DNA of 63,836 bases, counting the filler, from Pelomyxa schiedti (lineage: Eukaryota; Protista; Evosea), in assembly GCA_020536535.1 (NCBI GenBank). It is 7 parts of 7 records of this genome, joined end to end, with 100 filler letters (N's around TTAATTAATTAA, not from the genome) between each part and the next. Parts side by side here need not be neighbours in the genome. Positions count along the whole stretch, not along the records: positions 27,832 to 49,090 come from JAHLWZ010001075.1; 6 more parts are not named here. One strand, written 5' to 3'. The translations under genes were made by a program, and so were the position numbers. A model generated the notes under the pieces. The model saw only the letters and a program-made list of their open reading frames with translations. It ran no database searches and was not told the DNA's origin. How positions within the stretch are numbered: position 1 is the stretch's first letter; each line of letters opens with the position of its first letter. Below are positions 29,272-48,008 of the stretch, in pieces.

Positions 29272-30934
29272 TTAGTAGGATTGAAAGAGCCTTGCATAGA
29301 TAGGAGGCAGATGGCCCTCAGGGACAGCTGTTCCAGTGGAATTCAACCTCCTGGTTGGGTTAACTTGGGCTTGGGCTGGTTTTACAATCATTACAGGGTG
29401 CATGAGGGGGTGTATGGGGGTTGGGGGCCGCCTGTTTCCCGGTGTGGCCAGGTGCCTTGGCGAGGGAGGCGTTGGGGGAGTCCCGGGCATTGTGGGGGTG
29501 GATAAGGGGGGTGACGAAGGGAGGAGCGGCGGGGATACTCTGTTCTCGCCCCGGTGTGGTGGGGTCTTGAGCGGAGGGGGCATTGGGAAGCTGGCTCGCG
29601 GGAGAGAGGGGTCGGCCTCATCCTCGCCCCAGGACAGGAGCGGGGAGCGGGGGATAAGAGGGCTCGGGGTTGGGGTTGGGGCGAGGGGAAGCCCGAGTAT
29701 AATTGATGGAGAGGGTGATTGGGGTGGGGAGAGGGGTGGTAAAGCGAGAGAGCAGGGTGATGTGGAAGCAGTGGTGACCAGGGAAGGCGAGGAAGGCTTG
29801 CCGCCAAGTGGAACAAGTGGTGGAGGAGTAGTTGGAGGGGATTGAGGGGGTGGTGGAGATGGGGAGGATCGCCTTGATAGAATGTTATTTGGAGACTGGA
29901 ACCGCTGCATTGGTGAAGACCCACGCGTTGGCAGTTTTTCCAGTGGAGGGAGTGGCTTGTGATGTGATGGAGGCGAGCAGGACATTGAACTTTGTGGTCT
30001 GTTCATTCCGCAGTGAGACGGGATTTGCAGTTCAGCAGAAACACCCAAACGAGTGGTAGAAATTGCAGGAACACTATTGGAAAGGCAAAGAGACATGTCA
30101 CTCTTTGGAACAGAGGGGTGGAATGTGGCAATCAAGTATTCCAGGTTTACTGTAGAAATTTTTAGCGTAACCGCCTCATACTGCATCAGCTATTGGGTTC
30201 CGATGAAATGAGTGAGTTAAAAAAACCAAAGCGCGAAGCGAATGGATAAACACCTGGTACAAGTATTCCTTGGCTGGTGCAGCGCTAGGACGGCTCCTTT
30301 TCACAAAGCTGGCAGCATCGCGAAGTGGCATTTCGCAGTAGCTTATCAGATAGGCAATTGCCACGACAACCGATTGATTGTTCCCAGTGGCGCAATGGAC
30401 AAGGGTGGAATCCCTCATCTTCTCGTCCTCAGTCCCGCTGTCCCGAGACCACACAGAACACGATAATGGGCCCCCACCCACGCTCTCATTGGCATTTGGG
30501 TATGCACTAGACTTGGCGGCCTTCTTGTTGATGAAGTCCAAGCAGGTCCGCAACGTAGATGCCAAATTGTGCGGCCTGTCACTCCCAAATGCGCCCGTTG
30601 CGCACCGAGCCGTCGCGCCACTTCTTCCACTGCTTGTAGTGCTGCCACCATTGCACGAAATAGGAGGAGGAGGAGGAGGGATGCCGCTGCTACTACTACT
30701 ACAACAGGTTGGTGCATCGCAAGTGGTAGTCGAAGAGGCACCACTGCCCACGGGGCCGTACGACGGCATTGAAATGCGCATGGTGGTGAGGCCCCTGTGG
30801 GCGACAGAGATGAACTCCGAGTCGTCTACGGAGAGAAGCTTCGAGACACGGTGGTTGTTTCGAAGGGCATCGTCGTTGCTTCCTATTAGTAGGACTCGGT
30901 TCACTATTGTGGTGGGTTTTTGTTCGCTGTTCAT
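29272..30934 (-). CDS. Dual-specificity phosphatase-fold protein, probable pseudophosphatase, with Pro/Ser-rich C-terminus
   Basis: DSP-fold motifs LLIGS, LVHCATGNNQSVVVAIAYL, LRDAASFVKRSRP, QLMQYE. The CX5R arginine is replaced by Gln. Confidence 0.75.
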
Positions 30935-31017
30935 TACTGGGTGGTGGGGGTCTGGGTTTGTGTGTGTGTGGTGGGTTGTGTTGTGTGGTTTCCTTTTAGT
31001 TTGTTTGTTGTGTATTT

Positions 31018-31106
31018 GGCTGAATAAAATAATCAACAGACCGGAACGCCGTCATTTTCGTTATCGTCGCTCAGAATCGGCGGTCTGGTGTTTTTTTTAT
31101 TCAGCC
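31018..31106. mobile_element. 89-bp MITE, copy 2
   Basis: Same TIR as copy 1, flanked by ATTT at 31014-31017 and 31107-31110. Confidence 0.85.
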
Positions 31107-31196
31107 ATTTGTTTTCCACCCTTAGCTCTAGCGTTTCGGCTCGATACGTTCCTTTGTTCTTCAATTTTACCCAGTTTGCTGGGACTTTGTCCTTTT

Positions 31197-34100
31197 ATGG
31201 ATCCGACATCCTCTAAAGGTAAGGCATATTCCTACCTATGTATGCGAACATCGAACTTGCACTTGTTTCGATACTTAATTACCGGTCGGGTTCCACATTC
31301 GGCTCTCAAGGAACAAACGTGCCGACCAACCCTCACTCTCTGCACTCCTCTGGAACTCTCCGTCCTCTCCACTGTATCCTCTCCATTGCCCGTTCCAACC
31401 TTTTCATCACCGATGAAGCATTCCCGAAACGCAGACCGAGACGAACGACAAAAGAAAAAGAAAAACCGGCTGGCACCTCCTCACGGGAGCGAGGGCAATC
31501 TAACAGGCAGGAAATTCACACCCGCTCGTCGTCGACGTCATCGTGCGGCGTCGTTGCTGCCGCGTCAGCATCCGCGTCTGTATCTGCATCCCCGACGACG
31601 TCTTCTCGAGACAGCAGGGCCGGGCCCAAAATCGGCAGTGGTGGTGGAGGAGGTGTGATTTCGTTGAGCAGGCATCCTACTTCGAATTGTGCCCCCACCA
31701 ATTCGTCACCCTCATCTACTCCTGGTAAGGTGGCTGTAATATGTCTATTTTTTTTTCTCCAACCAAAAAGCTATTACTGAGAATTTCCTTCTATTTTTAG
31801 GTTTGTCACCAAGAGTAACTCCAACTGTCATTCCTCGGCTCAGAACTCACAGTTCAAGTGTTGGCGCTTCTTCAGGCTCTGCAGCTCCCTCTTCAAATCT
31901 GGGAATGACAGCTTTATCTCGCCGACTCCTTGCAAAGGAATGGAATGTAAGACTTGCGGCCAATGATGAACTGTGTACTTTATTTTCCCAGTTGCCTCCT
32001 CAGGCAACCGAATTCTCGAAATATGGTTTCCTACCTCTTCCTTTGATGTAGGGGTTGACTCATCACACAAGCACCATATTTCAAGAAATCTCTTGAGGAT
32101 CAAAGTCTACCAGTAAAAGAAAGAGCCCTTGATGCTTTGCTCATTTTTATTGACCACTCTGCAATCTCACCAACGTGTGTAGGCCTTGAATTTCTTTGAA
32201 CTGAGCCTTCTCCACTGCTAGATATGCAACTGAGCTCGCTCCTGTTTTGGTCAATAAATGCATTGTGTCTACTCGTGACTCCTTAAGACTGAAATCTATT
32301 GAGGCACTTCTCCTCTTTGTGGAAGTCAATGTACCTGAAGTTATTTTGGTTCTCTTCTTGCATATCTCCCTCCGTCCAACAAAATAATGCCAGGAAGAAC
32401 TTTCTAAGGCCTGTGTCCAAAAAGTGCCAAGACTATCTGCAATGTCGCTTCTTGCCATGAGAGAAATAGTGAGGTAGGCCCCTTCAAGAGTAGAATAAGC
32501 AAACTCTTTCGCATGTTACTCAAGAACAGGCAGTTTGGAATCCCACCCTTACCTGCCGACCCAATACTGAGGGTTCTTCAGCCGTGCTTTGAACACAGTG
32601 CCCAAGAAGTCCGTACTGAAGCTTTTACACTCGTGGTTGCCCTCCACCAGTGGCTTGGAGATTCACTGCGCCAACACATTGCCTACCTCAGGTAAAAGAA
32701 ATAAAATTGCATTTTTCTGATCTTGTTAGACCAGCACAAATGAAGGAATTGGATTCCCTTCTAGCACAAAGTGCTTCTGGTAGAATTTTTCCTTTCTTTT
32801 TTTTTTCCCCCTCTAACTTCCAAAGAAAAACCTCTGAGAACGCAGCGAATGTCTGATAACGATTTTATATTAAAAGTGCTCCTATGCAATACTGGCTATT
32901 TTCTCATTTATCTTAGGCACAGGAATTTCCACTACACGCGTCACACTCGGAAGATGATTCTGATTTTCAAGGCCACACTGAATTATATAGTGCAGAAAGC
33001 TCTTCCGAATCGGACATTTCAGATATTGGTCAGCCCAACGAACTTGAGATTTTCTTTTTTAAGAACTTTTCAGGAAAACCCTTGGGCGAAATCAAACCCC
33101 AAATTACACCCTCAAGCTCATCACAAACACCAGGAAGCACAACCAGCACAACAGTTGAGTCCCAGTTAACACTGAACACAAAAGGTGACATACTTTCCAG
33201 GCTCACTCCAGATTGGTACAAACGTATGGTAATACGCTCTTTTTATTTCAACGGTAAATGATTGAGTTCTTCAATGCCACTAGGAAGAAGGAGGATGGAT
33301 GGTGAGAAAAGAGACGTTAGATTACTTGAATAGTCAATTTCCAGGCAGCATAGACTCCAACAGTGAGGACTTTTCTCGCCTGATCCAAGCTCTCATAAAG
33401 GTACGAAGTCCTGGTCTCCTATCCAAAAGTAAACGCTCGTAGCTGCTGAGTGATTCTAATATCTCTGTCATTGCCTCTGTTACAAAATGTATTGAACTAC
33501 TTGCCTTCAATCTTGGAAAGGTAAAGAAAATCGTGCGTTGTGGGTTCACAGACATGTCAAGGAATTTGGATCACATGCAAAAAAACTCTTACCTGGTCTT
33601 TTGGATCGCTTAAAAGAAAAAAAGCCTGCCATCACTACTACGATTCATAACATTCTTGATGTACTAATTTCTGGTGCTGTACCACTTCCTGACCTAATGG
33701 ATGGTCCGTCACTTCTGATCAACCTCCTATGCTTATTATGACAGCTTTCAACAGGCATCTCAATCGCCCTCAACACCAAAATACCAAAGCTCAGATATGA
33801 AGTACTTCTATGGTTACAACATTGTATGGCTACAGCAACAAAGGAATCCCTGTTTACAGTCGAGCTCATAATGACCGATTCAATCTTGAAGGCTTGTTTC
33901 ACACTCTCCACTCTCAAGTCACATCGTTACAGTGTTTGGATGATGTTAATGTAGACGTACGAAAGATTGGCTTTACTGTGATGGGGTTGGTCTTTCTACT
34001 CTTGTGGTGTAGGTGCCTGCTCAGCCTTTTTATTCAGATCTTTTCTTGATTTACTGGGGGATAACCTGTCCAAGGCCACTGTGGCTGTTCTACTTGAAAA

Positions 34101-36140
34101 ACTGGAAAGAAGTAAAATTGCGGTCTTACGGAAGTATGTGAATTCAGACACCGCAAGACGCTGTCCTTGGCTTGCCCAACTTCCAATTGCAGTTCCATCT
34201 TCCTCTGCGACGGGGAATTCAGCTACACCACTCTCTCCTCAATTGTCAAATTCTTCAACTACGGCACAAAGTAATCCCTCGTCATCACCTGCTTGCATTG
34301 CACCTCCTCCCCTTCCAAATATGTCACCACAATCACCCTTTCCCAGTCCTGTACCTGGAGCAGCCATTAATCAAGATCTTCCCTCCCTTCAATCAAAGAT
34401 TCCTCCTCCTGTAGCCCGAGTTAATTCCTTTCCCAGGTAATCTTTTCCTCACAACAAACTTTTAGTAACGGTTTTAGAAAATCGTCAATCTCAGTAAATT
34501 GTTCGGATTCACCCCTTTCTCCTTCTCAACCTAGCTCAGTAACAACTCTCCCAGAATCTCTACTGCCTGCACCCCAAATCCCTGCATCCGCGTCGCCAAT
34601 CTCACCAAGGGCCAATGCCAGTCCATCCAATATTCTGCCTCAAGGCAATCAAAGGCCACCCCCAACTGCACCACCATTTAATCGGGAAACCCGTGTAACA
34701 CGTTCTGGGCCGAGGCGTTCATCTGTGCGGTCACAATCCCCTCCATCATCCAAACATAGCTCTGGGACAATAACACAACCAAGCTTTTCACCTAAACTTA
34801 CTAGTGTGAGTTCCAATATAACTCATGCCACTCGTGATGATTCTGGGATCCCAAGTACATTAGGTACTTAAACGGCATCTCAACCAACTTACATTGATTC
34901 AAGTTAAAAACGTATCTCCTGGGAACAGAACACCAAATTGCACTGAAGAGACTTCAATCAATCAGGGAACGCCTATGAATCCTCCTCCATCACGCATACC
35001 AGCTCCATCACATAATGACATGCAACGATACTCTCGATCAAGTAACCTAGAAAATAACTGGACCAGTTTTCAAGATAAGGAGGGGTCTTTCCTCTCTAAA
35101 CGCGTGGAAGATGACGACTGCAGTACTGATTCCTTTGACAAGTCACTTTCCCAAGGTATGTCGGAAGCAGAAATAATTTGCTGAGTCTCAAGCCATGTGT
35201 CTGAAGTGTCTAGCATGAAATCGGAACTCGAAAAGCACTATAGTGCAATGAAGGGCTATCTTTTTGGGTTGGAAGCAGAAATCCAGAGCAACAAGGGAAC
35301 CAAGCAAAGTACCAAGATTCTACAACACAAATATGACGAACTCTTACAGTCTCGAAGTTCCTTACAAACCGAAGTTTGTATCCCCCCTCCCGGCCATATG
35401 TGTAAGTGGCTCGCAGAATGCTCGTTTGGAACAAGAGGCTTCATCCGAGCGTATCCTGCGTAGTAAAGCCGAGGAAAAGCTTTCCAATATTGAAATAGGT
35501 ATTCATTTCGCACTTGCAAGTAGCTTAAAACCCTTCTAGAAATGAAAGCAGTTGCCGCAAGTAAAGTAAGCATTAAGGAAAAGATGGAACAACTGGAGGT
35601 ACTTCTGTGGTGGAAGGTTTTTTATTTTGACTTATATTTACCAGGAAACATGTGCAGAGTTAAGAAAACAATTAAAGGGTGCGAATGCCACAGTTGAAAC
35701 AACTCGACAATCTCAAACTTCTGGGGGTGTTTCGGCTTTCCTGTCCTCAGTCAATCTCCAAACCTTTCAACTTCAGGATCTCTGTACAATAGAAAAATCA
35801 GCTGATGAGTTTTTATCCTCTTTAAGAAAAGTCAAGGTACTCCAAATCACGCACTTACTTGAACATACAAACAACCGCAAACGCAACCACCCAAAAACCC
35901 CAATACCTAAACCAAAACAAACACACTAATCAAATGGAAACACAGCAAGAGACGATGGGCAAAGAGCTCGAAATGATGCAGCGAATGCACAAGATGAACA
36001 ACTGCAGCGCCTGCAAAGGTGCACCTCGGCAAGTTGTGGTGCTGCCGTGCCAGCACATGCTGTGTTCTGCCTGTGCCACGGGGCCCACGTGCCCAATTTG
36101 TGGTGAAAGAGTCACCTCCAGGATCAATGTTTTTGTGTAA
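31197..36140 (+). CDS. XMAP215/Dis1/Stu2-like protein (TOG1-TOG2, S/P-rich linker, coiled coil) with C-terminal C3HC4 RING finger
   Basis: TOG motifs LSRRLLAKEWNVRLAANDEL, ERALDALLIF, EVRTEAFTLVVALHQWLG, LRPAQMKEL, WMVRKETL, DSNISV, LLDRLKEKKP. In-frame splices run through the coiled coil to CSACKGAPRQVVVLPCQHMLCSACATGPTCPIC...INVFV*. Confidence 0.8.
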
Positions 36141-36389
36141 ACCTACAACCACCAGCCAAGCCACTCAGCCACAGGTCTCAGCCTCAGCCACAACACCCCT
36201 AAATATCTTTATACCCCAAGCACTCACTGACGAAATGCACCTGTAAGAAAATATCTAAAACGTTCACTATTCCACTTCCATGATTACTTACCTTTTCCAC
36301 CCCTAACCAACGAAAACGAAATCCTCATTCTGCTATTCAGGCTTTTTCGGTTTTTCCCTTCGATTGGTTCATTATCAAAACATAACTTG

Positions 36390-38399: not shown

Positions 38400-40363
38400 T
38401 TATGGGGAATCATGCCTTCTCCTCTTGGGCTTGGTCTCTTCCTCACTGGAGCTGCTGGAGGAAGAAGAGCTGCTGTCACTGTCACTTTCACTAGATGAAC
38501 CGGAGCTTGATGATGAAGACCGGGAACTGGAACTAGAAGAACTTCGGCTTCTTGACTTCCGGCGGGGTCTTTTTTGACCAGCTAGAGAGGCAGTAGTACT
38601 CAGGGGAGTCTTTTCTGTGGGTGGCTCAACCTTTACAGCAGGATCCCGCTCTTTGGGGGGTATTTCAGGTGCCTTATCTCCCTTATCTCCTTCCGCAGCT
38701 CTTCCTGTGTCTCTTGGTCGTTCCGCACCTCTATTACTATCTCGGTCACTTTCCCTGTCCCTGCCTCTGTCTCTATCCCTGTCCCTGTCCCTGTCTCGTT
38801 CAGTTTCTCTGCCTCTTTCCCTTCCATACTCTCGGTCCCGGTTTCTGTCATAGTCCATTCCTCTCTCCCTTCCTCTCTCTCTACCCCTGTCTCTGTTTCT
38901 TTCTCTTTCTCGTTCCCTCTCTCGTTGTTCTCTTTCCCTTTCCCTTTCTCGTTCTCGTTCTCGTTCACGTCCACGGTCACGTTCTGTTTCTCTGTCTCTA
39001 TCTCTATCCACATCCTTCGATTTCTCCCGTGCTGCATTCTCAACAGCTCTCCCTCCTGTCCCTTCACTCCTGCTTGCATTCATTGCATGGCCTTCATTGT
39101 TCCTTTGATTTGGCTCATTTGTTTCTGATTTGATTGTAACTCCTGTTTCTGGTTTTTCCTTGGTACTGTCTTTCTCAATTCGAGGTTGTTCCCTGTCTTG
39201 GTCTCTCTCAGTACCAACTTCTTTGTGTGCATGAGTGTCTCTAGGAGTTCTATCAGGTGATCTCCTTTCTCTGGTATGTGAATGGGATGCAGTGTGGGTG
39301 GATTCAAGCTCAGAGGAATGTTCTGCAGTGGTTTTTTTCGCCATTTTTTCTGCTTTCTTTGCCTCTTTTATCTTTTTTTTTTCTTCTTTTCGTTGTTGCC
39401 TTAGACGATGCTTTTCCATCTATATAACATAAGAATGGATTCTAAACAAGATGAAGGGTATTTGACCTTTTCTGCATGTTTCTTTTGCCTCAATGCTACT
39501 CTCTGGGCCTCTTTTGCCTCCTCCTCCTTTTTCATCAACTCTATTTGCTTTTCTTTTTCTTCCTCCAGGCGCTGTTGAGCCAACTGCAACTTCTTTTCGT
39601 CTTGTAACTTCCTGTTGAAAAAGAAAGAAAAGTCAATACACGAGTGGGGAACATGAACGAAAATAATAAACTGGGGGAGACAACGCCTGTTAAAAGCACT
39701 GCCTTCAACGTAATTATCAGAAATTCCAAGCGCTCGTCTGGCTTTAATGGTCTCCTCTGCCTTGAGCTTCGCTTGAATATGGGTTTCCAACCTGATTTGA
39801 AGTAAGTTCACAAGAATGTATTAAATGGATCCTAGTAATATTCAGAATATATTTTCTTTGTAAATAATGACACACGGACTCACACTTTACGTCGCTCCAA
39901 TTCAGCTGGGTCAATCTCCATACTCTTCAGCTTCTCTACAATTTCAGTTCGCTTTTTATTCATTCTTTCCGTTAGTTCTTCCTCGGGGAGTCTTTGTTTG
40001 GGTTTTAGCGAAAATTGAAGTAGAGTAACAAAAAGCGTACCCGCTGTCAATCAGGCCAGTTGCTTCCGCCCACTGCATGACCTGCAGCTCCACCTGCCTC
40101 TTTCTTTGGTGCTCCAAAATTGCTTCGTCTGCCTTTGCTGTCTTCGGTGGCACCACTGGTTGATCCAACATCGCAGTGTTGTTTGCTCCCGGCGGTTGAA
40201 AACCACCGGCGCCGTAGGCCGCTCCCTGAGGCGCACCAAACGAGGGTGGATTGGGTTTAGATCTCTGAGCCGCAAATGCGTGCGGCACGAACGACAAGTT
40301 GCGCTGCACGTAGCCGTTGGTACCGGAGCCGCGAGGTGTCCGTAGACCGATATTGTTATACAT
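38400..40363 (-). CDS. CWC21: Cwc21/SRRM2-type splicing factor with RE/RD-dipeptide and Ser-rich tail
   Basis: MYNNIGLRTPRGSGTNGYVQRNLS and ILEHQRKRQVELQV (cwf21 domain), plus a long RE/RD/RS low-complexity C-terminus. Confidence 0.92.
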
Positions 40364-45884: not shown

Positions 45885-48008
45885 ATGCAGCCACTGCTGA
45901 CATCGTTTTTTACGGTTGTATCTGATGGCAGCGCAGGCACCAAGTTGGCGTTAGCGAAGTCCATTGACGACGTGTGGGCAGCGGAGAACAGGAGGCTTGA
46001 AAAAGAGGCGGAAGAGCATGAAAAACGAGAACTCGATCAAATAGTAGCCGAGGTTGAAAGGTTCGTGGGTTTTTTTTGCTTTTTTTTTTTTTTTTTCTTT
46101 TTGGCGTTTTTTTTTTTGTATCTTATTGACTATAAGAGTGAGGGCTGTTAAAACAAGAAATGTTTGTGAGAGAGTACGGAAGGACGAAGAGTGGCGCGAA
46201 AAGCGAAGAGAGGACTTGAGGAGAAGGCAAGAAGGTAGTAGAGTTGCTTCTCTTTGAAATTCCTTCTTTTTTTTAATTTGTGGTTTGTCTAGGCCAGGGA
46301 AGAGAAATTGTACCAGGACTCTATCTTGGAAATGAAGCCTCTGCTTCCAACTTTTCGTGGCTGGCGAATGAAGGAATTACACACATTCTAAACTGCACAA
46401 AGGAGGTGCCTTGCTTTTACGCACCAAAGGGCAGAGTTGCACCTGGCGAGGCTTCAAGTGAAGATGAAAATGACGATGCTGAAGACAAGCTCAAATGTGA
46501 TGTTGCACCAAATGTGATTGATACACCAAATCCCACGGGCTCCACAACCAGCACAACAAATTCGGAACTTCCACCTCCGTCTTCATCAGATGAAGTGGGC
46601 AAAGTAAAATCTGATAGTGAGCAGGCAACAAGCTCTACTTCACCCAGCAAAGTCAAGGAAAAACTCAAGAGTTTTCTTGCCAATCAATGCGACCTCGGCC
46701 ACGAGTCGGAAGATAATTGTGACTCTGAGGAAGACGTGAATGATAGTGGCAAGATTAAAATTGTGTACCACAGAATCCCTGTGGAAGACGCTGCGCACTG
46801 TCGAATCTTCCATTTATTCCCTGAGTCGAATACTTTCATCTCAAGTGCCGTCGCAGGAGGTGGCAAAGTTTGCACCACCCTATGCTTTCTATTAACAAAC
46901 GACACAAGGCATTTCCTTACATTCGAGCAGGTTCTGGTCCATTGCAAGGAGGGTAGAAGTCGCTCTGCCGCTTTTGCAGTTGCCTATTTGATGAACTCTT
47001 CTGGAATCTCTCTACAAGTTTGCATTTATACCCTGCATTCTCCCACCCACTGTTTTTCCAGGAAAGCCGCGATATGGTTGACACCAAGTGTTGGACATCC
47101 AACATCAATCCAGGATTTGAACTCGAGTTAAGCAAATACGAACTTAAGTTGTTTCCTGGTACTTGTGCTTTTTAAACTAATTGCAACTAAGTGCGTCTTC
47201 TAGATAAAGGTGAGACCTCAGTTCACAAAGATAAATCTGAACGAAGTGGTCGCTCTAATGCTGTCGATTTGATTACCGCGGAGGTTGATGCAGAGACTGA
47301 CAGTAGCCGCAAACGGTTTCCATTTAGCTTTAGCTTCTATTAGTTGTTCTCACCTCCTCAAGATCCCCTGCAACTGTCAATAGCAGCAGCCCTAAAAGCA
47401 AACGCAGAAGACTAGTCCGTCACAACTTGAAAGATGATACTGCCAAACCCATCCCCTCCCCACTTTGTGAAGAGGCAGAGGAAACATGCCCCAATTCAGC
47501 TGATGTAGAGCCAACCCGTACTTTGTCAACTCTAAAAGCGGAAGTTCCGGTCACCTCAACGAAGGACATAGCACCCGAACCCCAACCTGTCTCCACCACT
47601 ACCATGACCACCACTCCATCCCAAACACCCCAGTCCAAGGAAGAAAGTTCAACAATGGAAACTTGCAAGGCTACAACAACCAATCTTGCCAACACTGCAG
47701 AACAAAAACCAGAAGTGAAAACACCAGAAGAACCAATACCAAAACCCACAGAAAATCCCAAAACTACAAAAGACAAGACACCTGCTAAGCCGACAAAAGT
47801 ATCAAAACATGTGAAAAAACCCAAACAAAAACCAGTGGAAGCCCAAGTAGTTGAGCAGCCAAAGCCTATTGAAGCAACAACCCCCCAAAAGGCAGAAATT
47901 CCTCAAACAACAGCAACATCGAAGGAACTCAGCCCTCCAAAGCAATCCCCTGGCAAAAGGCCCAAACAAGCAGTTCTTGACAAGTGGTTTGTGTTAAAAA
48001 AGACTTGA
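45885..48008 (+). CDS. Active-type dual-specificity phosphatase with NLS and C-terminal PIP-box-like motif
   Basis: EIVPGLYLGN, ITHILNCT, IPVED, VLVHCKEGRSRSAAFAVAYLM, INPGF. In-frame splices reach PKSKRRRL and the terminal KQAVLDKWFVLKKT*. Confidence 0.8.

What the first reader, a model, noticed from the sequence alone, without database searches (positions are those of the whole stretch)
31197..36140. Stu2/XMAP215-like TOG-TOG protein carrying a RING E3 domain
The reconstruction gives two TOG domains (~31900-34140), a Ser/Pro-rich linker and a coiled coil, which is the fungal Stu2/Alp14 dimeric layout rather than the five-TOG layout of ch-TOG/DdCP224. It then ends in an IAP-like C3HC4 RING (~36000-36140). 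I know of no characterised TOG-family microtubule polymerase with a RING. Inference: a tubulin- or plus-end-targeted ubiquitin ligase that could couple tubulin sensing to degradation.
Basis: partly seen in the sequence, partly recalled or inferred. Interest (0 to 1): 0.76.

Follow-up and report, generated by a model that had tools for sequence, protein, structure and literature searches.

The report
Two-TOG microtubule regulator ending in RING
An anaerobic amoeba (Pelomyxa schiedti) has one spliced gene that joins a Stu2/XMAP215-type tubulin-binding protein to an IAP-like RING ubiquitin-ligase domain, a combination I found in no other protein or paper; whether the RING works as a ligase is untested.

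Summary
The piece is NCBI contig JAHLWZ010001075.1 of Pelomyxa schiedti (Archamoebae). One + strand gene of 22 exons and 21 very short introns encodes TOG1, an acidic linker, TOG2, a 299-aa Ser/Pro-rich basic linker, a coiled coil of about 170 aa and a C-terminal C3HC4 RING.

A spliced contig in run X4 runs from the first TOG1 exon to beyond the stop codon. It crosses the 35836|35946 junction in frame, and its length matches my exon model to the base. The RING exon therefore belongs to the same mRNA.

The TOG domains are XMAP215-type: Pfam PF21041 scores 147 bits, Msps TOG2 matches at 4e-27, and the TOG2 fold has TM 0.83 to Stu2 TOG2. The tubulin-contact Trp, Lys and Arg are kept. The RING is closest to BIRC7, cIAP and XIAP. 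All eight zinc ligands are present, but Gly replaces the usual cationic linchpin and Ala sits at the first E2-contact slot.

The coil is predicted to form a parallel, in-register homodimer. The nearest relative, from Physarum, has TOG-TOG-coil and no RING. An exhaustive search with the RING exon found no second TOG-RING protein.

NCBI names the protein only "alp14". Ligase activity and substrate remain inference. I rate it a new variant of a known kind, of moderate interest.

The parts
31905..36140 (+). Coding region of the TOG-TOG-coil-RING gene: 22 exons, 1072 aa, from ATG 31905 to stop 36138-36140. Exons: 31905-32025, 32072-32174, 32222-32348, 32394-32473, 32530-32691, 32730-32779, 32826-32875, 32917-33028, 33074-33228, 33284-33400, 33443-33520, 33562-33703, 33755-33891, 33933-33985, 34038-34436, 34478-34863, 34904-35155, 35207-35373, 35417-35498, 35540-35598, 35645-35836, 35946-36140.
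   Evidence: Spliced contig (record 24, 3168 nt) of run X4 laid from about 31979 to 36169, with GT..AG joints. The model's spliced length 32072-36169 is 3127 nt; minus the 6-nt allele at 34611 this is 3121, exactly the contig's arithmetic. The model is identical to database protein P0001 residues 207-1252 except at the exon 1/2 junction.
31238..31724 (+). Annotated N-terminal extension. Together with 31801-31904 it adds 206 aa to P0001, joined through intron 31725-31800. It is doubtful.
   Evidence: It is present in P0001. X4 has no depth here. The Physarum relative starts directly at TOG1. Both SNPs in this stretch are second-codon-position changes, against 4 synonymous of 6 in the confirmed CDS.
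31905..32775 (+). TOG1 (model residues 1-213), with the HEAT-repeat A loop Trp at 31941-31943 (KEWNVR).
   Evidence: PF21041. Aligns to Alp14 TOG1 in 6mze/6mzf and Stu2 TOG1 in 4ffb. W (repeat A), K-x-P-R (repeat D) and V-R (repeat E) are kept; the repeat B motif D-S-N is changed to D-Q-S.
32776..33183 (+). Acidic Ser/Asp/Glu-rich inter-TOG linker (residues 214-305, pI 4.6).
   Evidence: Composition; no Pfam match.
33184..34173 (+). TOG2 (residues 306-541), with the HEAT-repeat A loop Trp at 33296-33298 (GGWMVR). Contains the GC-AG intron 33892-33932.
   Evidence: phmmer to Msps TOG2 2qk2 at 4.3e-27. Invariant W, R, D-x-N, K-E-K-K, K-x-P and R columns are kept in a 10-sequence alignment. The AlphaFold model has pLDDT 89.9. 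Foldseek top hits are 2qk2, 6mze/6mzf, 2qk1 and 4u3j (TM 0.75-0.83), ahead of CLASP and Crescerin TOGs.
34174..35151 (+). Ser/Pro-rich basic linker (residues 542-840): 50 Pro, 16 S/T-P sites, pI 9.5. It carries an in-frame 6-nt indel polymorphism at 34611.
   Evidence: indel table 4.
35152..35996 (+). Proline-free helical region forming the coiled coil (residues 841-1025), including the pre-RING helix. Introns: 35156-35206, 35374-35416, 35499-35539, 35599-35644, 35837-35945.
   Evidence: Homodimer prediction on P0001 1015-1252: ipSAE 0.41 against a best control of 0.17. Contacts are in register (residue i with residue i) in a 3-4 spacing from 1022 to 1195; runs agree in at least 95% of contacts; partner pLDDT at least 81. 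The five introns sum to 290 nt, as the RNA contig requires.
35837..35945 (+). Last intron: 109 nt, phase 0, twice the length of any other. It separates the coil from the RING exon and carries a 6-nt insertion polymorphism behind 35916.
   Evidence: The contig piece resumes at 35944 with a 2-nt ambiguity that matches the exon end AG at 35835-35836. Read-through would stop at 35927-35929, giving a RING-less product.
35946..36140 (+). RING exon (64 codons plus the stop codon): pre-RING helix, C3HC4 RING (C1028, C1031, C1043, H1045, C1048, C1051, C1057, C1060 in model numbering) and the C-terminal tail SRINVFV.
   Evidence: PF13920 at 1.9e-9. phmmer to the BIRC7 RING 4auq at 2.5e-8, then cIAP and XIAP RINGs; all ligands and the tail Phe align. 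Ligand spacing.

Best explanation
This is a real, expressed Pelomyxa schiedti gene. It encodes a homodimeric, two-TOG member of the XMAP215/Dis1/Stu2 family that has acquired a C-terminal IAP-type RING on a separate last exon.

Shown here:
- one mRNA carries all the domains;
- both TOGs are XMAP215-type and keep the tubulin-contact residues;
- the RING has a full set of zinc ligands and an IAP-like tail.

Predicted in silico:
- the coil of about 170 residues forms a parallel, in-register dimer that runs into the pre-RING helix, so the two RINGs would sit side by side, the arrangement IAP-type RINGs need.

Inferred:
- TOG1 and TOG2 bind curved alpha/beta-tubulin, and the basic Ser/Pro linker binds the microtubule lattice, which places the dimer at growing ends or organising centres as for Stu2/Alp14;
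- the paired RINGs there recruit an E2~ubiquitin and modify the protein itself or a neighbour (tubulin or another microtubule-associated protein), tying turnover or signalling to where tubulin is being handled.

My odds: the architecture is real, 0.9; it belongs to the XMAP215 family, 0.9; the RING is catalytically competent, about 0.5; tubulin is the substrate, about 0.15-0.2.
For: - Spliced contig of run X4 joins TOG1 exons to the RING exon. The exon model fits the contig length exactly and stays in frame.
- Three unspliced genomic contigs (X1-X3) cover the locus without a break.
- Pfam PF21041 at 147 bits plus PF13920 on P0001.
- PDB sequence hits to Msps, Stu2 and Alp14 TOGs at 4e-27 to 2e-6, against CLASP at 5e-4.
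- The TOG2 model matches XMAP215-family TOG2 structures best.
- Conserved W, K and R contact columns. Their roles are described in PMC4142611.
- The RING is closest to BIRC7, cIAP and XIAP.
- Parallel homodimer prediction: 0.41 against a best control of 0.17. That mark was reached by 21 of 30 solved homodimers and 0 of 23 solved monomers.
- The Physarum relative has the same TOG-TOG-coil layout and is sister to this protein at 100/100 support.
- SNPs in the confirmed CDS are mostly synonymous.
Against: - There is no functional data of any kind.
- The RING has Gly where most active RINGs have a cationic linchpin directly after the last Cys (role described in PMC12326332). It has Ala where IAPs have Val in the first zinc loop.
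- Confident dimer contacts stop at residue 1195, before the RING.
- The fusion is seen in one species only. Conservation of the RING could not be tested.
- Transcript support is one low-depth contig, from a run whose kind is not on record.
- The fungal C-terminal segment PF21042 is absent.
Confidence: 0.6

Rival explanations
1. The fusion is real, but the RING is not a ligase. It serves as a zinc-stabilised dimerisation or docking module that caps the coiled coil, and the protein is simply the amoeba's Stu2-like regulator of microtubule growth.
For: Gly sits at the linchpin slot (CPICG) and Ala at the first E2-contact slot (CSAC) in the alignment to BIRC7. The linchpin is normally cationic and tunes transfer (PMC12326332). 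IAP-type RINGs dimerise through the same helix and tail that are kept here (their role is from my own knowledge of the BIRC7-UbcH5B~Ub structure).
Against: All eight ligands, the CP-x-C proline and the tail aromatic residue are kept. RINGs with non-cationic linchpins can still be active at a lower rate (PMC12326332). The coil already provides dimerisation, so a second dimeriser adds little.
Confidence: 0.22
2. The RING-bearing mRNA is a minor or recent, selectively neutral product: an exon captured from a neighbouring small RING gene, or read-through splicing. The main product would lack the RING, for example by retaining the 109-nt intron and ending 31 codons later.
For: The last intron is twice as long as any other and open in frame for 30 codons before a stop at 35927-35929. 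The RING lies on its own exon. No relative with a RING was found. RNA support is a single contig at depth about 11.
Against: The only transcript contig seen is spliced in frame, and no retained-intron form was reported in X4. The NCBI gene model, built independently with the authors' RNA data (PMC8887013), includes the RING. No SNP falls in the RING exon, while the introns carry four SNPs and an indel.
Confidence: 0.13
3. The join is an artefact: a chimeric assembly or a wrong gene model fusing two genes.
For: The genome comes from amplified single cells (PMC8887013). The annotated model does contain errors: a wrong exon 1/2 junction and a doubtful N-terminal extension.
Against: Three separate genomic contigs of 5.3-9.5 kb are collinear with the window across the whole gene. 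The spliced contig crosses a precise GT..AG junction in frame, and its length agrees with the model exactly.
Confidence: 0.03

Closest known systems
Stu2 / Alp14 / Dis1 (fungal two-TOG members of the XMAP215 family)
   Same: N-terminal TOG1-TOG2 pair with conserved tubulin-contact residues, a basic Ser-rich linker and a parallel homodimeric coiled coil. The best PDB and fold matches are Alp14, Stu2 and Msps TOGs. The nearest ESM Atlas clusters are fungal Alp14 families (score 0.82, a lead only).
   Different: It carries a C-terminal RING in place of the fungal C-terminal segment (PF21042 absent). The coil is longer (about 170 residues, against the 15-nm coil described for Stu2 in PMC5996958). 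In the tree it is not nested among ascomycete Alp14 proteins but sister to a Physarum protein.
Physarum polycephalum transcript Phypoly_transcript_02039.p1 (P0101, 933 aa)
   Same: The closest relative found: 45% identity over TOG1 and 32% over TOG2, with the same TOG-linker-TOG-linker-coil order.
   Different: It ends after the coil and has no RING.
MEKK1 / MAP3K1
   Same: The one characterised protein I found that combines a tubulin-binding TOG domain with a RING-type E3 domain on one chain (PMC7474687).
   Different: MEKK1 has a single cryptic TOG, an N-terminal SWIM and RING, and a kinase domain. It has no TOG array and no coiled coil, and it is not in the XMAP215 family or a polymerase.
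IAP C-terminal RINGs (BIRC7/ML-IAP, cIAP1/2, XIAP)
   Same: The best sequence matches for the last exon, covering the pre-RING helix, the C3HC4 ligands and the C-terminal tail with its aromatic residue.
   Different: This protein has no BIR domains. Gly replaces the linchpin Arg and Ala replaces Val in the first loop.
Microtubule-associated TRIM ligases (MID1 and relatives). Recalled from memory, not tested here.
   Same: Dimeric coiled-coil RING ligases that sit on microtubules.
   Different: Their RING is N-terminal and followed by B-boxes, their coil is antiparallel, and they bind microtubules through a COS box, not TOG domains.

Membership tests
XMAP215/Dis1/Stu2 family | N-terminal array of TOG domains recognised by the family profile | tested here: met
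   PF21041 at 7.4e-43 (147 bits, 2 stretches) on P0001. Single exons reach 30.8 and 35.4 bits.
XMAP215/Dis1/Stu2 family | TOGs closer to XMAP215-class than to CLASP- or Crescerin-class TOGs | tested here: met
   phmmer: Msps TOG2 4e-27, Alp14 3e-20 and Stu2 2e-9, against CLASP at 5e-4. Foldseek ranks 1-11 are XMAP215-family TOGs.
XMAP215/Dis1/Stu2 family | Tubulin-contact residues on the intra-HEAT loops: repeat A Trp, repeat C Lys, repeat D Lys, repeat E Arg | tested here: met
   In TOG2 all are kept in invariant columns. In TOG1 the W, K-x-P-R and V-R are kept, while the repeat B D-S-N is changed to D-Q-S. Residue roles are from PMC4142611.
XMAP215/Dis1/Stu2 family | Basic linker that binds the microtubule lattice | tested here: inconclusive
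   The linker has pI 9.5 but only 24 K+R in 299 residues and is dominated by Ser and Pro.
XMAP215/Dis1/Stu2 family | Two-TOG subclass: homodimerisation through a parallel coiled coil | tested here: met
   In silico only: ipSAE 0.41 against a best control of 0.17, with in-register contacts from 1022 to 1195.
XMAP215/Dis1/Stu2 family | Fungal Stu2 C-terminal segment (PF21042) | tested here: not met
   No PF21042 hit on P0001, whereas the fungal relatives carry it.
XMAP215/Dis1/Stu2 family | Microtubule polymerase activity | not testable with these tools
   Needs a TIRF or bulk tubulin assay.
RING-type E3 ligase (zf-C3HC4_3, IAP-like) | Eight zinc ligands in cross-brace spacing | tested here: met
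   C-x2-C-x11-C-x-H-x2-C-x2-C-x5-C-x2-C. PF13920 at 1.9e-9.
RING-type E3 ligase (zf-C3HC4_3, IAP-like) | C-terminal position, with the pre-RING helix and aromatic tail used for RING dimerisation | tested here: met
   The alignment to BIRC7 4auq covers the helix and tail, and the tail Phe aligns. The role of the tail is from my own knowledge.
RING-type E3 ligase (zf-C3HC4_3, IAP-like) | Cationic linchpin residue directly after the last zinc ligand | tested here: not met
   CPICG in this protein against CPICR in BIRC7. Role from PMC12326332.
RING-type E3 ligase (zf-C3HC4_3, IAP-like) | Ubiquitin transfer with an E2 | not testable with these tools
   Needs an auto-ubiquitination or E2~Ub discharge assay.
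IAP family | At least one BIR domain | tested here: not met
   No PF00653 hit on P0001. Only the RING resembles IAPs.
MEKK1-like TOG+RING kinases | SWIM finger and a Ser/Thr kinase domain | tested here: not met
   Neither was found by Pfam.

The most novel reading that the evidence does not exclude
The protein is an active dimeric E3 whose substrate is what its own TOG domains hold or sit next to: curved tubulin dimers, or partners at plus ends, kinetochores or basal-body microtubule cones. An XMAP215-class polymerase would then directly couple tubulin capture to ubiquitination, a form of tubulin or plus-end quality control not described in any organism.
Probability: 0.15. Interest if true: 0.8.

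Novelty: new variant of a known kind. Interest (0 to 1): 0.55.

Why it matters
XMAP215/Stu2 proteins are the universal microtubule polymerases. Their known C-terminal additions are docking motifs, not enzymes.

A natural fusion to a dimer-dependent RING raises two possibilities. A cell might wire tubulin or plus-end recognition directly to ubiquitination. Alternatively, it might control the level of its polymerase by self-ubiquitination at the site of action. The fusion gives a compact construct (coil-RING, or TOG2-linker-coil-RING) for testing this in vitro.

The finding also shows, together with the Physarum relative, that the two-TOG dimeric layout usually called "fungal" occurs in Amoebozoa.

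The limits are clear: one species, no conservation data, no biochemistry, and an atypical linchpin position.

Tried and rejected
1. My first intron enumeration allowed only GT donors and fixed the first coil intron at 35156-35192. It gave wrong local solutions (33824-33864, and 4- or 13-nt micro-exons). I replaced these after P0001 and the Physarum alignment pointed to GC-AG 33892-33932 and to 35156-35206. Only that set gives the exact contig length.

2. The three word-indexed homologue searches returned only 10, 6 and 2 proteins. They are not a survey of TOG+RING architectures. They also cannot show whether P. schiedti has a five-TOG paralogue; that question stays open.

3. The exhaustive search used the 64-aa RING exon only. 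Its long hits were IAPs or multi-RING proteins, not TOG proteins.

4. The metagenome scan with the RING exon found nothing.

5. Rfam and tRNA scans of the piece found nothing.

6. No run on record as RNA holds the locus. I take X4 for cDNA only because its contig lacks all 21 introns and because the study made Smart-seq2 libraries.

8. The Atlas search gave scores of 0.82, which are leads only.

9. Exons were searched by reference and the database protein P0001 stood in for the whole. P0001 differs from my model at the exon 1/2 junction and by the N-terminal extension. The joined model was used only in local scripts.

10. RING-RING contacts were not confidently predicted, so I make no claim about them.
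Full report
**What the piece is.** The 21,259-bp piece (window 27832-49090) is eukaryotic and intron-rich. A database protein identical to the last exon carries the NCBI name "Spindle pole body component alp14 [Pelomyxa schiedti]". It is encoded on contig JAHLWZ010001075.1 of assembly GCA_020536535.1, at contig positions 3407-8309, which is window 31238-36140. P. schiedti is an anaerobic archamoeba. Its genome and transcriptome were made from single cells, using whole-genome amplification and Smart-seq2. The authors report 7.4 introns per gene and 1.6% GC-AG introns (PMC8887013).

**Is the RING on the same transcript?** Four runs of one study hold the locus.
- Runs X1-X3 give unspliced contigs of 5.3-9.5 kb that are collinear with the window.
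- Run X4 gives one 3168-nt contig on the + strand that skips a series of GT..AG introns. It is laid from about 31979 (TOG1) to 36169, 29 nt past the stop codon.

I rebuilt the exon chain from the reported joints, open reading frames and the contig's own coordinates. I corrected two places with the database protein and its Physarum relative. The final model has 22 exons and 21 introns. Twenty are GT-AG and one is GC-AG. Lengths are 38-56 nt, except the last at 109 nt.

The spliced length from 32072 to 36169 is 3127 nt. X4 carries the 6-nt deletion allele at 34611, which gives 3121 nt. That is exactly what the contig's coordinates require. The frame set by TOG1 runs without a stop through junction 35836|35946 into the RING and ends at 36138-36140. 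The caveat is that this rests on one contig of modest depth, from a run whose kind is not on record.

**Gene-model details.**
- The annotated protein P0001 (1252 aa) equals my model except at the exon 1/2 junction. There the RNA joint (32025|32072) restores 18 residues of TOG1 (CTLFSQLPPQATEFSKYA) that align with the Physarum sequence.
- P0001 also has a 206-aa low-complexity N-terminal extension. It has no X4 coverage and no counterpart in Physarum, and both SNPs in it are non-synonymous. I take ATG 31905 as the likely start, giving 1072 aa.
- In the confirmed CDS, 4 of 6 SNPs are synonymous and the one indel is in frame. Four SNPs and one 6-nt indel lie in introns. None lies in the RING exon.

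**Are the HEAT repeats TOG-type?** Yes.
- Pfam PF21041 (XMAP215/Dis1/CLASP TOG) scores 147 bits in two stretches, and CLASP_N also covers the second domain.
- Against PDB sequences, the second domain matches Drosophila Msps TOG2 (2qk2, 4.3e-27). Both domains match Alp14 TOG1-TOG2 (6mze/6mzf, 3e-20). Stu2 TOG2 (2e-9), ch-TOG TOG4 and Stu2 TOG1 follow. CLASP TOGs reach only 5e-4.
- An AlphaFold model of TOG2 built on a 10-sequence alignment has pLDDT 89.9. Its Foldseek hits rank XMAP215-family TOGs first (2qk2, 6mze/6mzf, 2qk1 and 4u3j, TM up to 0.83), then CLASP and Crescerin.
- The residues that contact tubulin in solved complexes are the repeat A loop Trp, repeat C Lys and repeat E Arg (PMC4142611). 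All are kept in TOG2, in invariant columns. In TOG1, W13, K-x-P-R and V-R are kept and only the repeat B D-S-N motif is altered.

The second refutation condition is therefore also not met.

**The rest of the protein.**
- The inter-TOG linker is acidic (pI 4.6).
- After TOG2 come 299 residues with 45% Ser/Thr/Pro, 16 S/T-P sites and pI 9.5.
- Next come about 170 proline-free residues with heptad character.
- Two copies of P0001 1015-1252 were predicted to pair. The score was 0.41 against 0.17 for the best of three controls. Runs agreed in at least 95% of contacts and partner pLDDT was at least 81. That mark was reached by 21 of 30 solved homodimers and 0 of 23 solved monomers. On eukaryotes without an older solved relative, only 1 of 7 reached it.
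- The contacts are residue i with residue i, in a 3-4 spacing, from 1022 to 1195. This is a parallel, in-register coiled coil that runs into the pre-RING helix. The RINGs themselves are not among the confident contacts.
- This supports pairing but does not show it.

**The RING.** The last exon matches PF13920 (1.9e-9). Its best solved relatives are the C-terminal RINGs of BIRC7 (4auq, 2.5e-8), cIAP2, cIAP1 and XIAP. The alignment covers the preceding helix and the C-terminal tail, including the tail Phe. The eight ligands have canonical spacing.

Two positions are atypical:
- the first zinc loop reads CSAC, where IAPs have CKVC;
- the residue after the last Cys is Gly, where BIRC7 has Arg.

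That second position is the linchpin. It is usually cationic and sets the rate of ubiquitin transfer (PMC12326332). There are no BIR domains. The module is IAP-like in type only, and its ligase competence is about even odds.

**Relatives and distribution.**
- The nearest relative found is a 933-aa Physarum polycephalum transcript product. It has 45% identity over TOG1 and 32% over TOG2, followed by a linker and a coil, and it ends without a RING.
- In a tree of the TOG1-TOG2 region, Pelomyxa and Physarum are sisters (100/100). They lie outside the ascomycete Alp14 clade. The TOG part is therefore amoebozoan, not a fungal contaminant, and the two-TOG plus coil layout is not confined to fungi.
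- An exhaustive phmmer search of 1.84 billion cluster representatives with the RING exon found only this protein below 1e-30. The long proteins among the other 99 hits are IAPs or multi-RING proteins without TOGs.
- The word-indexed searches were too shallow to survey architectures, or to say whether P. schiedti also has a five-TOG paralogue.
- A metagenome scan found nothing.

**Literature.** A full-text search for TOG together with RING or E3 ligase returned one relevant case. MEKK1 has SWIM, RING, a cryptic TOG that binds curved tubulin, and a kinase domain (PMC7474687). I found no XMAP215-family member with a RING, and the P. schiedti papers do not discuss this gene.

**Mechanism.**
- Most likely (0.6 for the package): a Stu2-like dimer whose TOG pairs and basic linker take it to tubulin and microtubule ends. 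Its coiled coil holds two IAP-type RINGs together so that they can engage E2~ubiquitin and modify the protein itself or a neighbour.
- Rival 1 (0.22): the RING is a non-catalytic cap or docking module.
- Rival 2 (0.13): the RING-bearing mRNA is a minor or recent product. Retaining the unusually long last intron would give a RING-less protein that stops at 35927-35929.
- Rival 3 (0.03): the join is an artefact.

**Verdict.** The structural interpretation is supported and the functional inference is open. This is a new variant of a known kind, so far lineage-restricted, and of moderate interest.

Noticed in passing
window 31017-31108: A miniature inverted-repeat element of about 92 nt with perfect 12-nt terminal inverted repeats (GGCTGAATAAAA). 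It lies between the phosphatase gene and the TOG gene. Summed contig depth over it is about 15,000, against about 19 for the flanks, in runs X1-X3. Dozens of contigs diverge at its two ends, so it has many hundreds of copies in the genome. It has no tRNA or Rfam match.
   Followed up: partly
window 30176-31036, - strand: The neighbouring dual-specificity phosphatase gene (PF00782, 2.7e-10) has the active-site loop HCATGNNQS, with Gln where the C-x5-R signature needs Arg. It may be a pseudophosphatase. A second phosphatase-like ORF at 46280-47131 has the canonical HCKEGRSRS.
   Followed up: no
window 32026-32071 and 31238-31904: The NCBI gene model P0001 mis-splices the first intron, losing 18 residues of TOG1 that the RNA contig and the Physarum relative support. 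It also starts 206 codons upstream, in a low-complexity stretch without RNA support.
   Followed up: yes
window 33892-33932: This is the only GC-AG intron of the gene (41 nt). The species is reported to have 1.6% such introns (PMC8887013).
   Followed up: yes
window 35837-35945: The last intron is 109 nt, while the other 20 are 38-56 nt. It is in phase 0 and open for 30 codons before a stop, so retention would give a RING-less isoform. It carries a 6-nt insertion polymorphism behind 35916.
   Followed up: partly
P0101 (Physarum polycephalum, EukProt transcript): A two-TOG plus coiled-coil XMAP215-family protein of 933 aa in a myxogastrid. The dimeric layout usually described as fungal therefore also occurs in Amoebozoa.
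   Followed up: partly
window 38400-39419, - strand: A long ORF encodes an Arg/Asp/Glu/Ser dipeptide-repeat protein (RD/RE runs and a poly-Ser tail), resembling splicing-associated RS/RD proteins.
   Followed up: no
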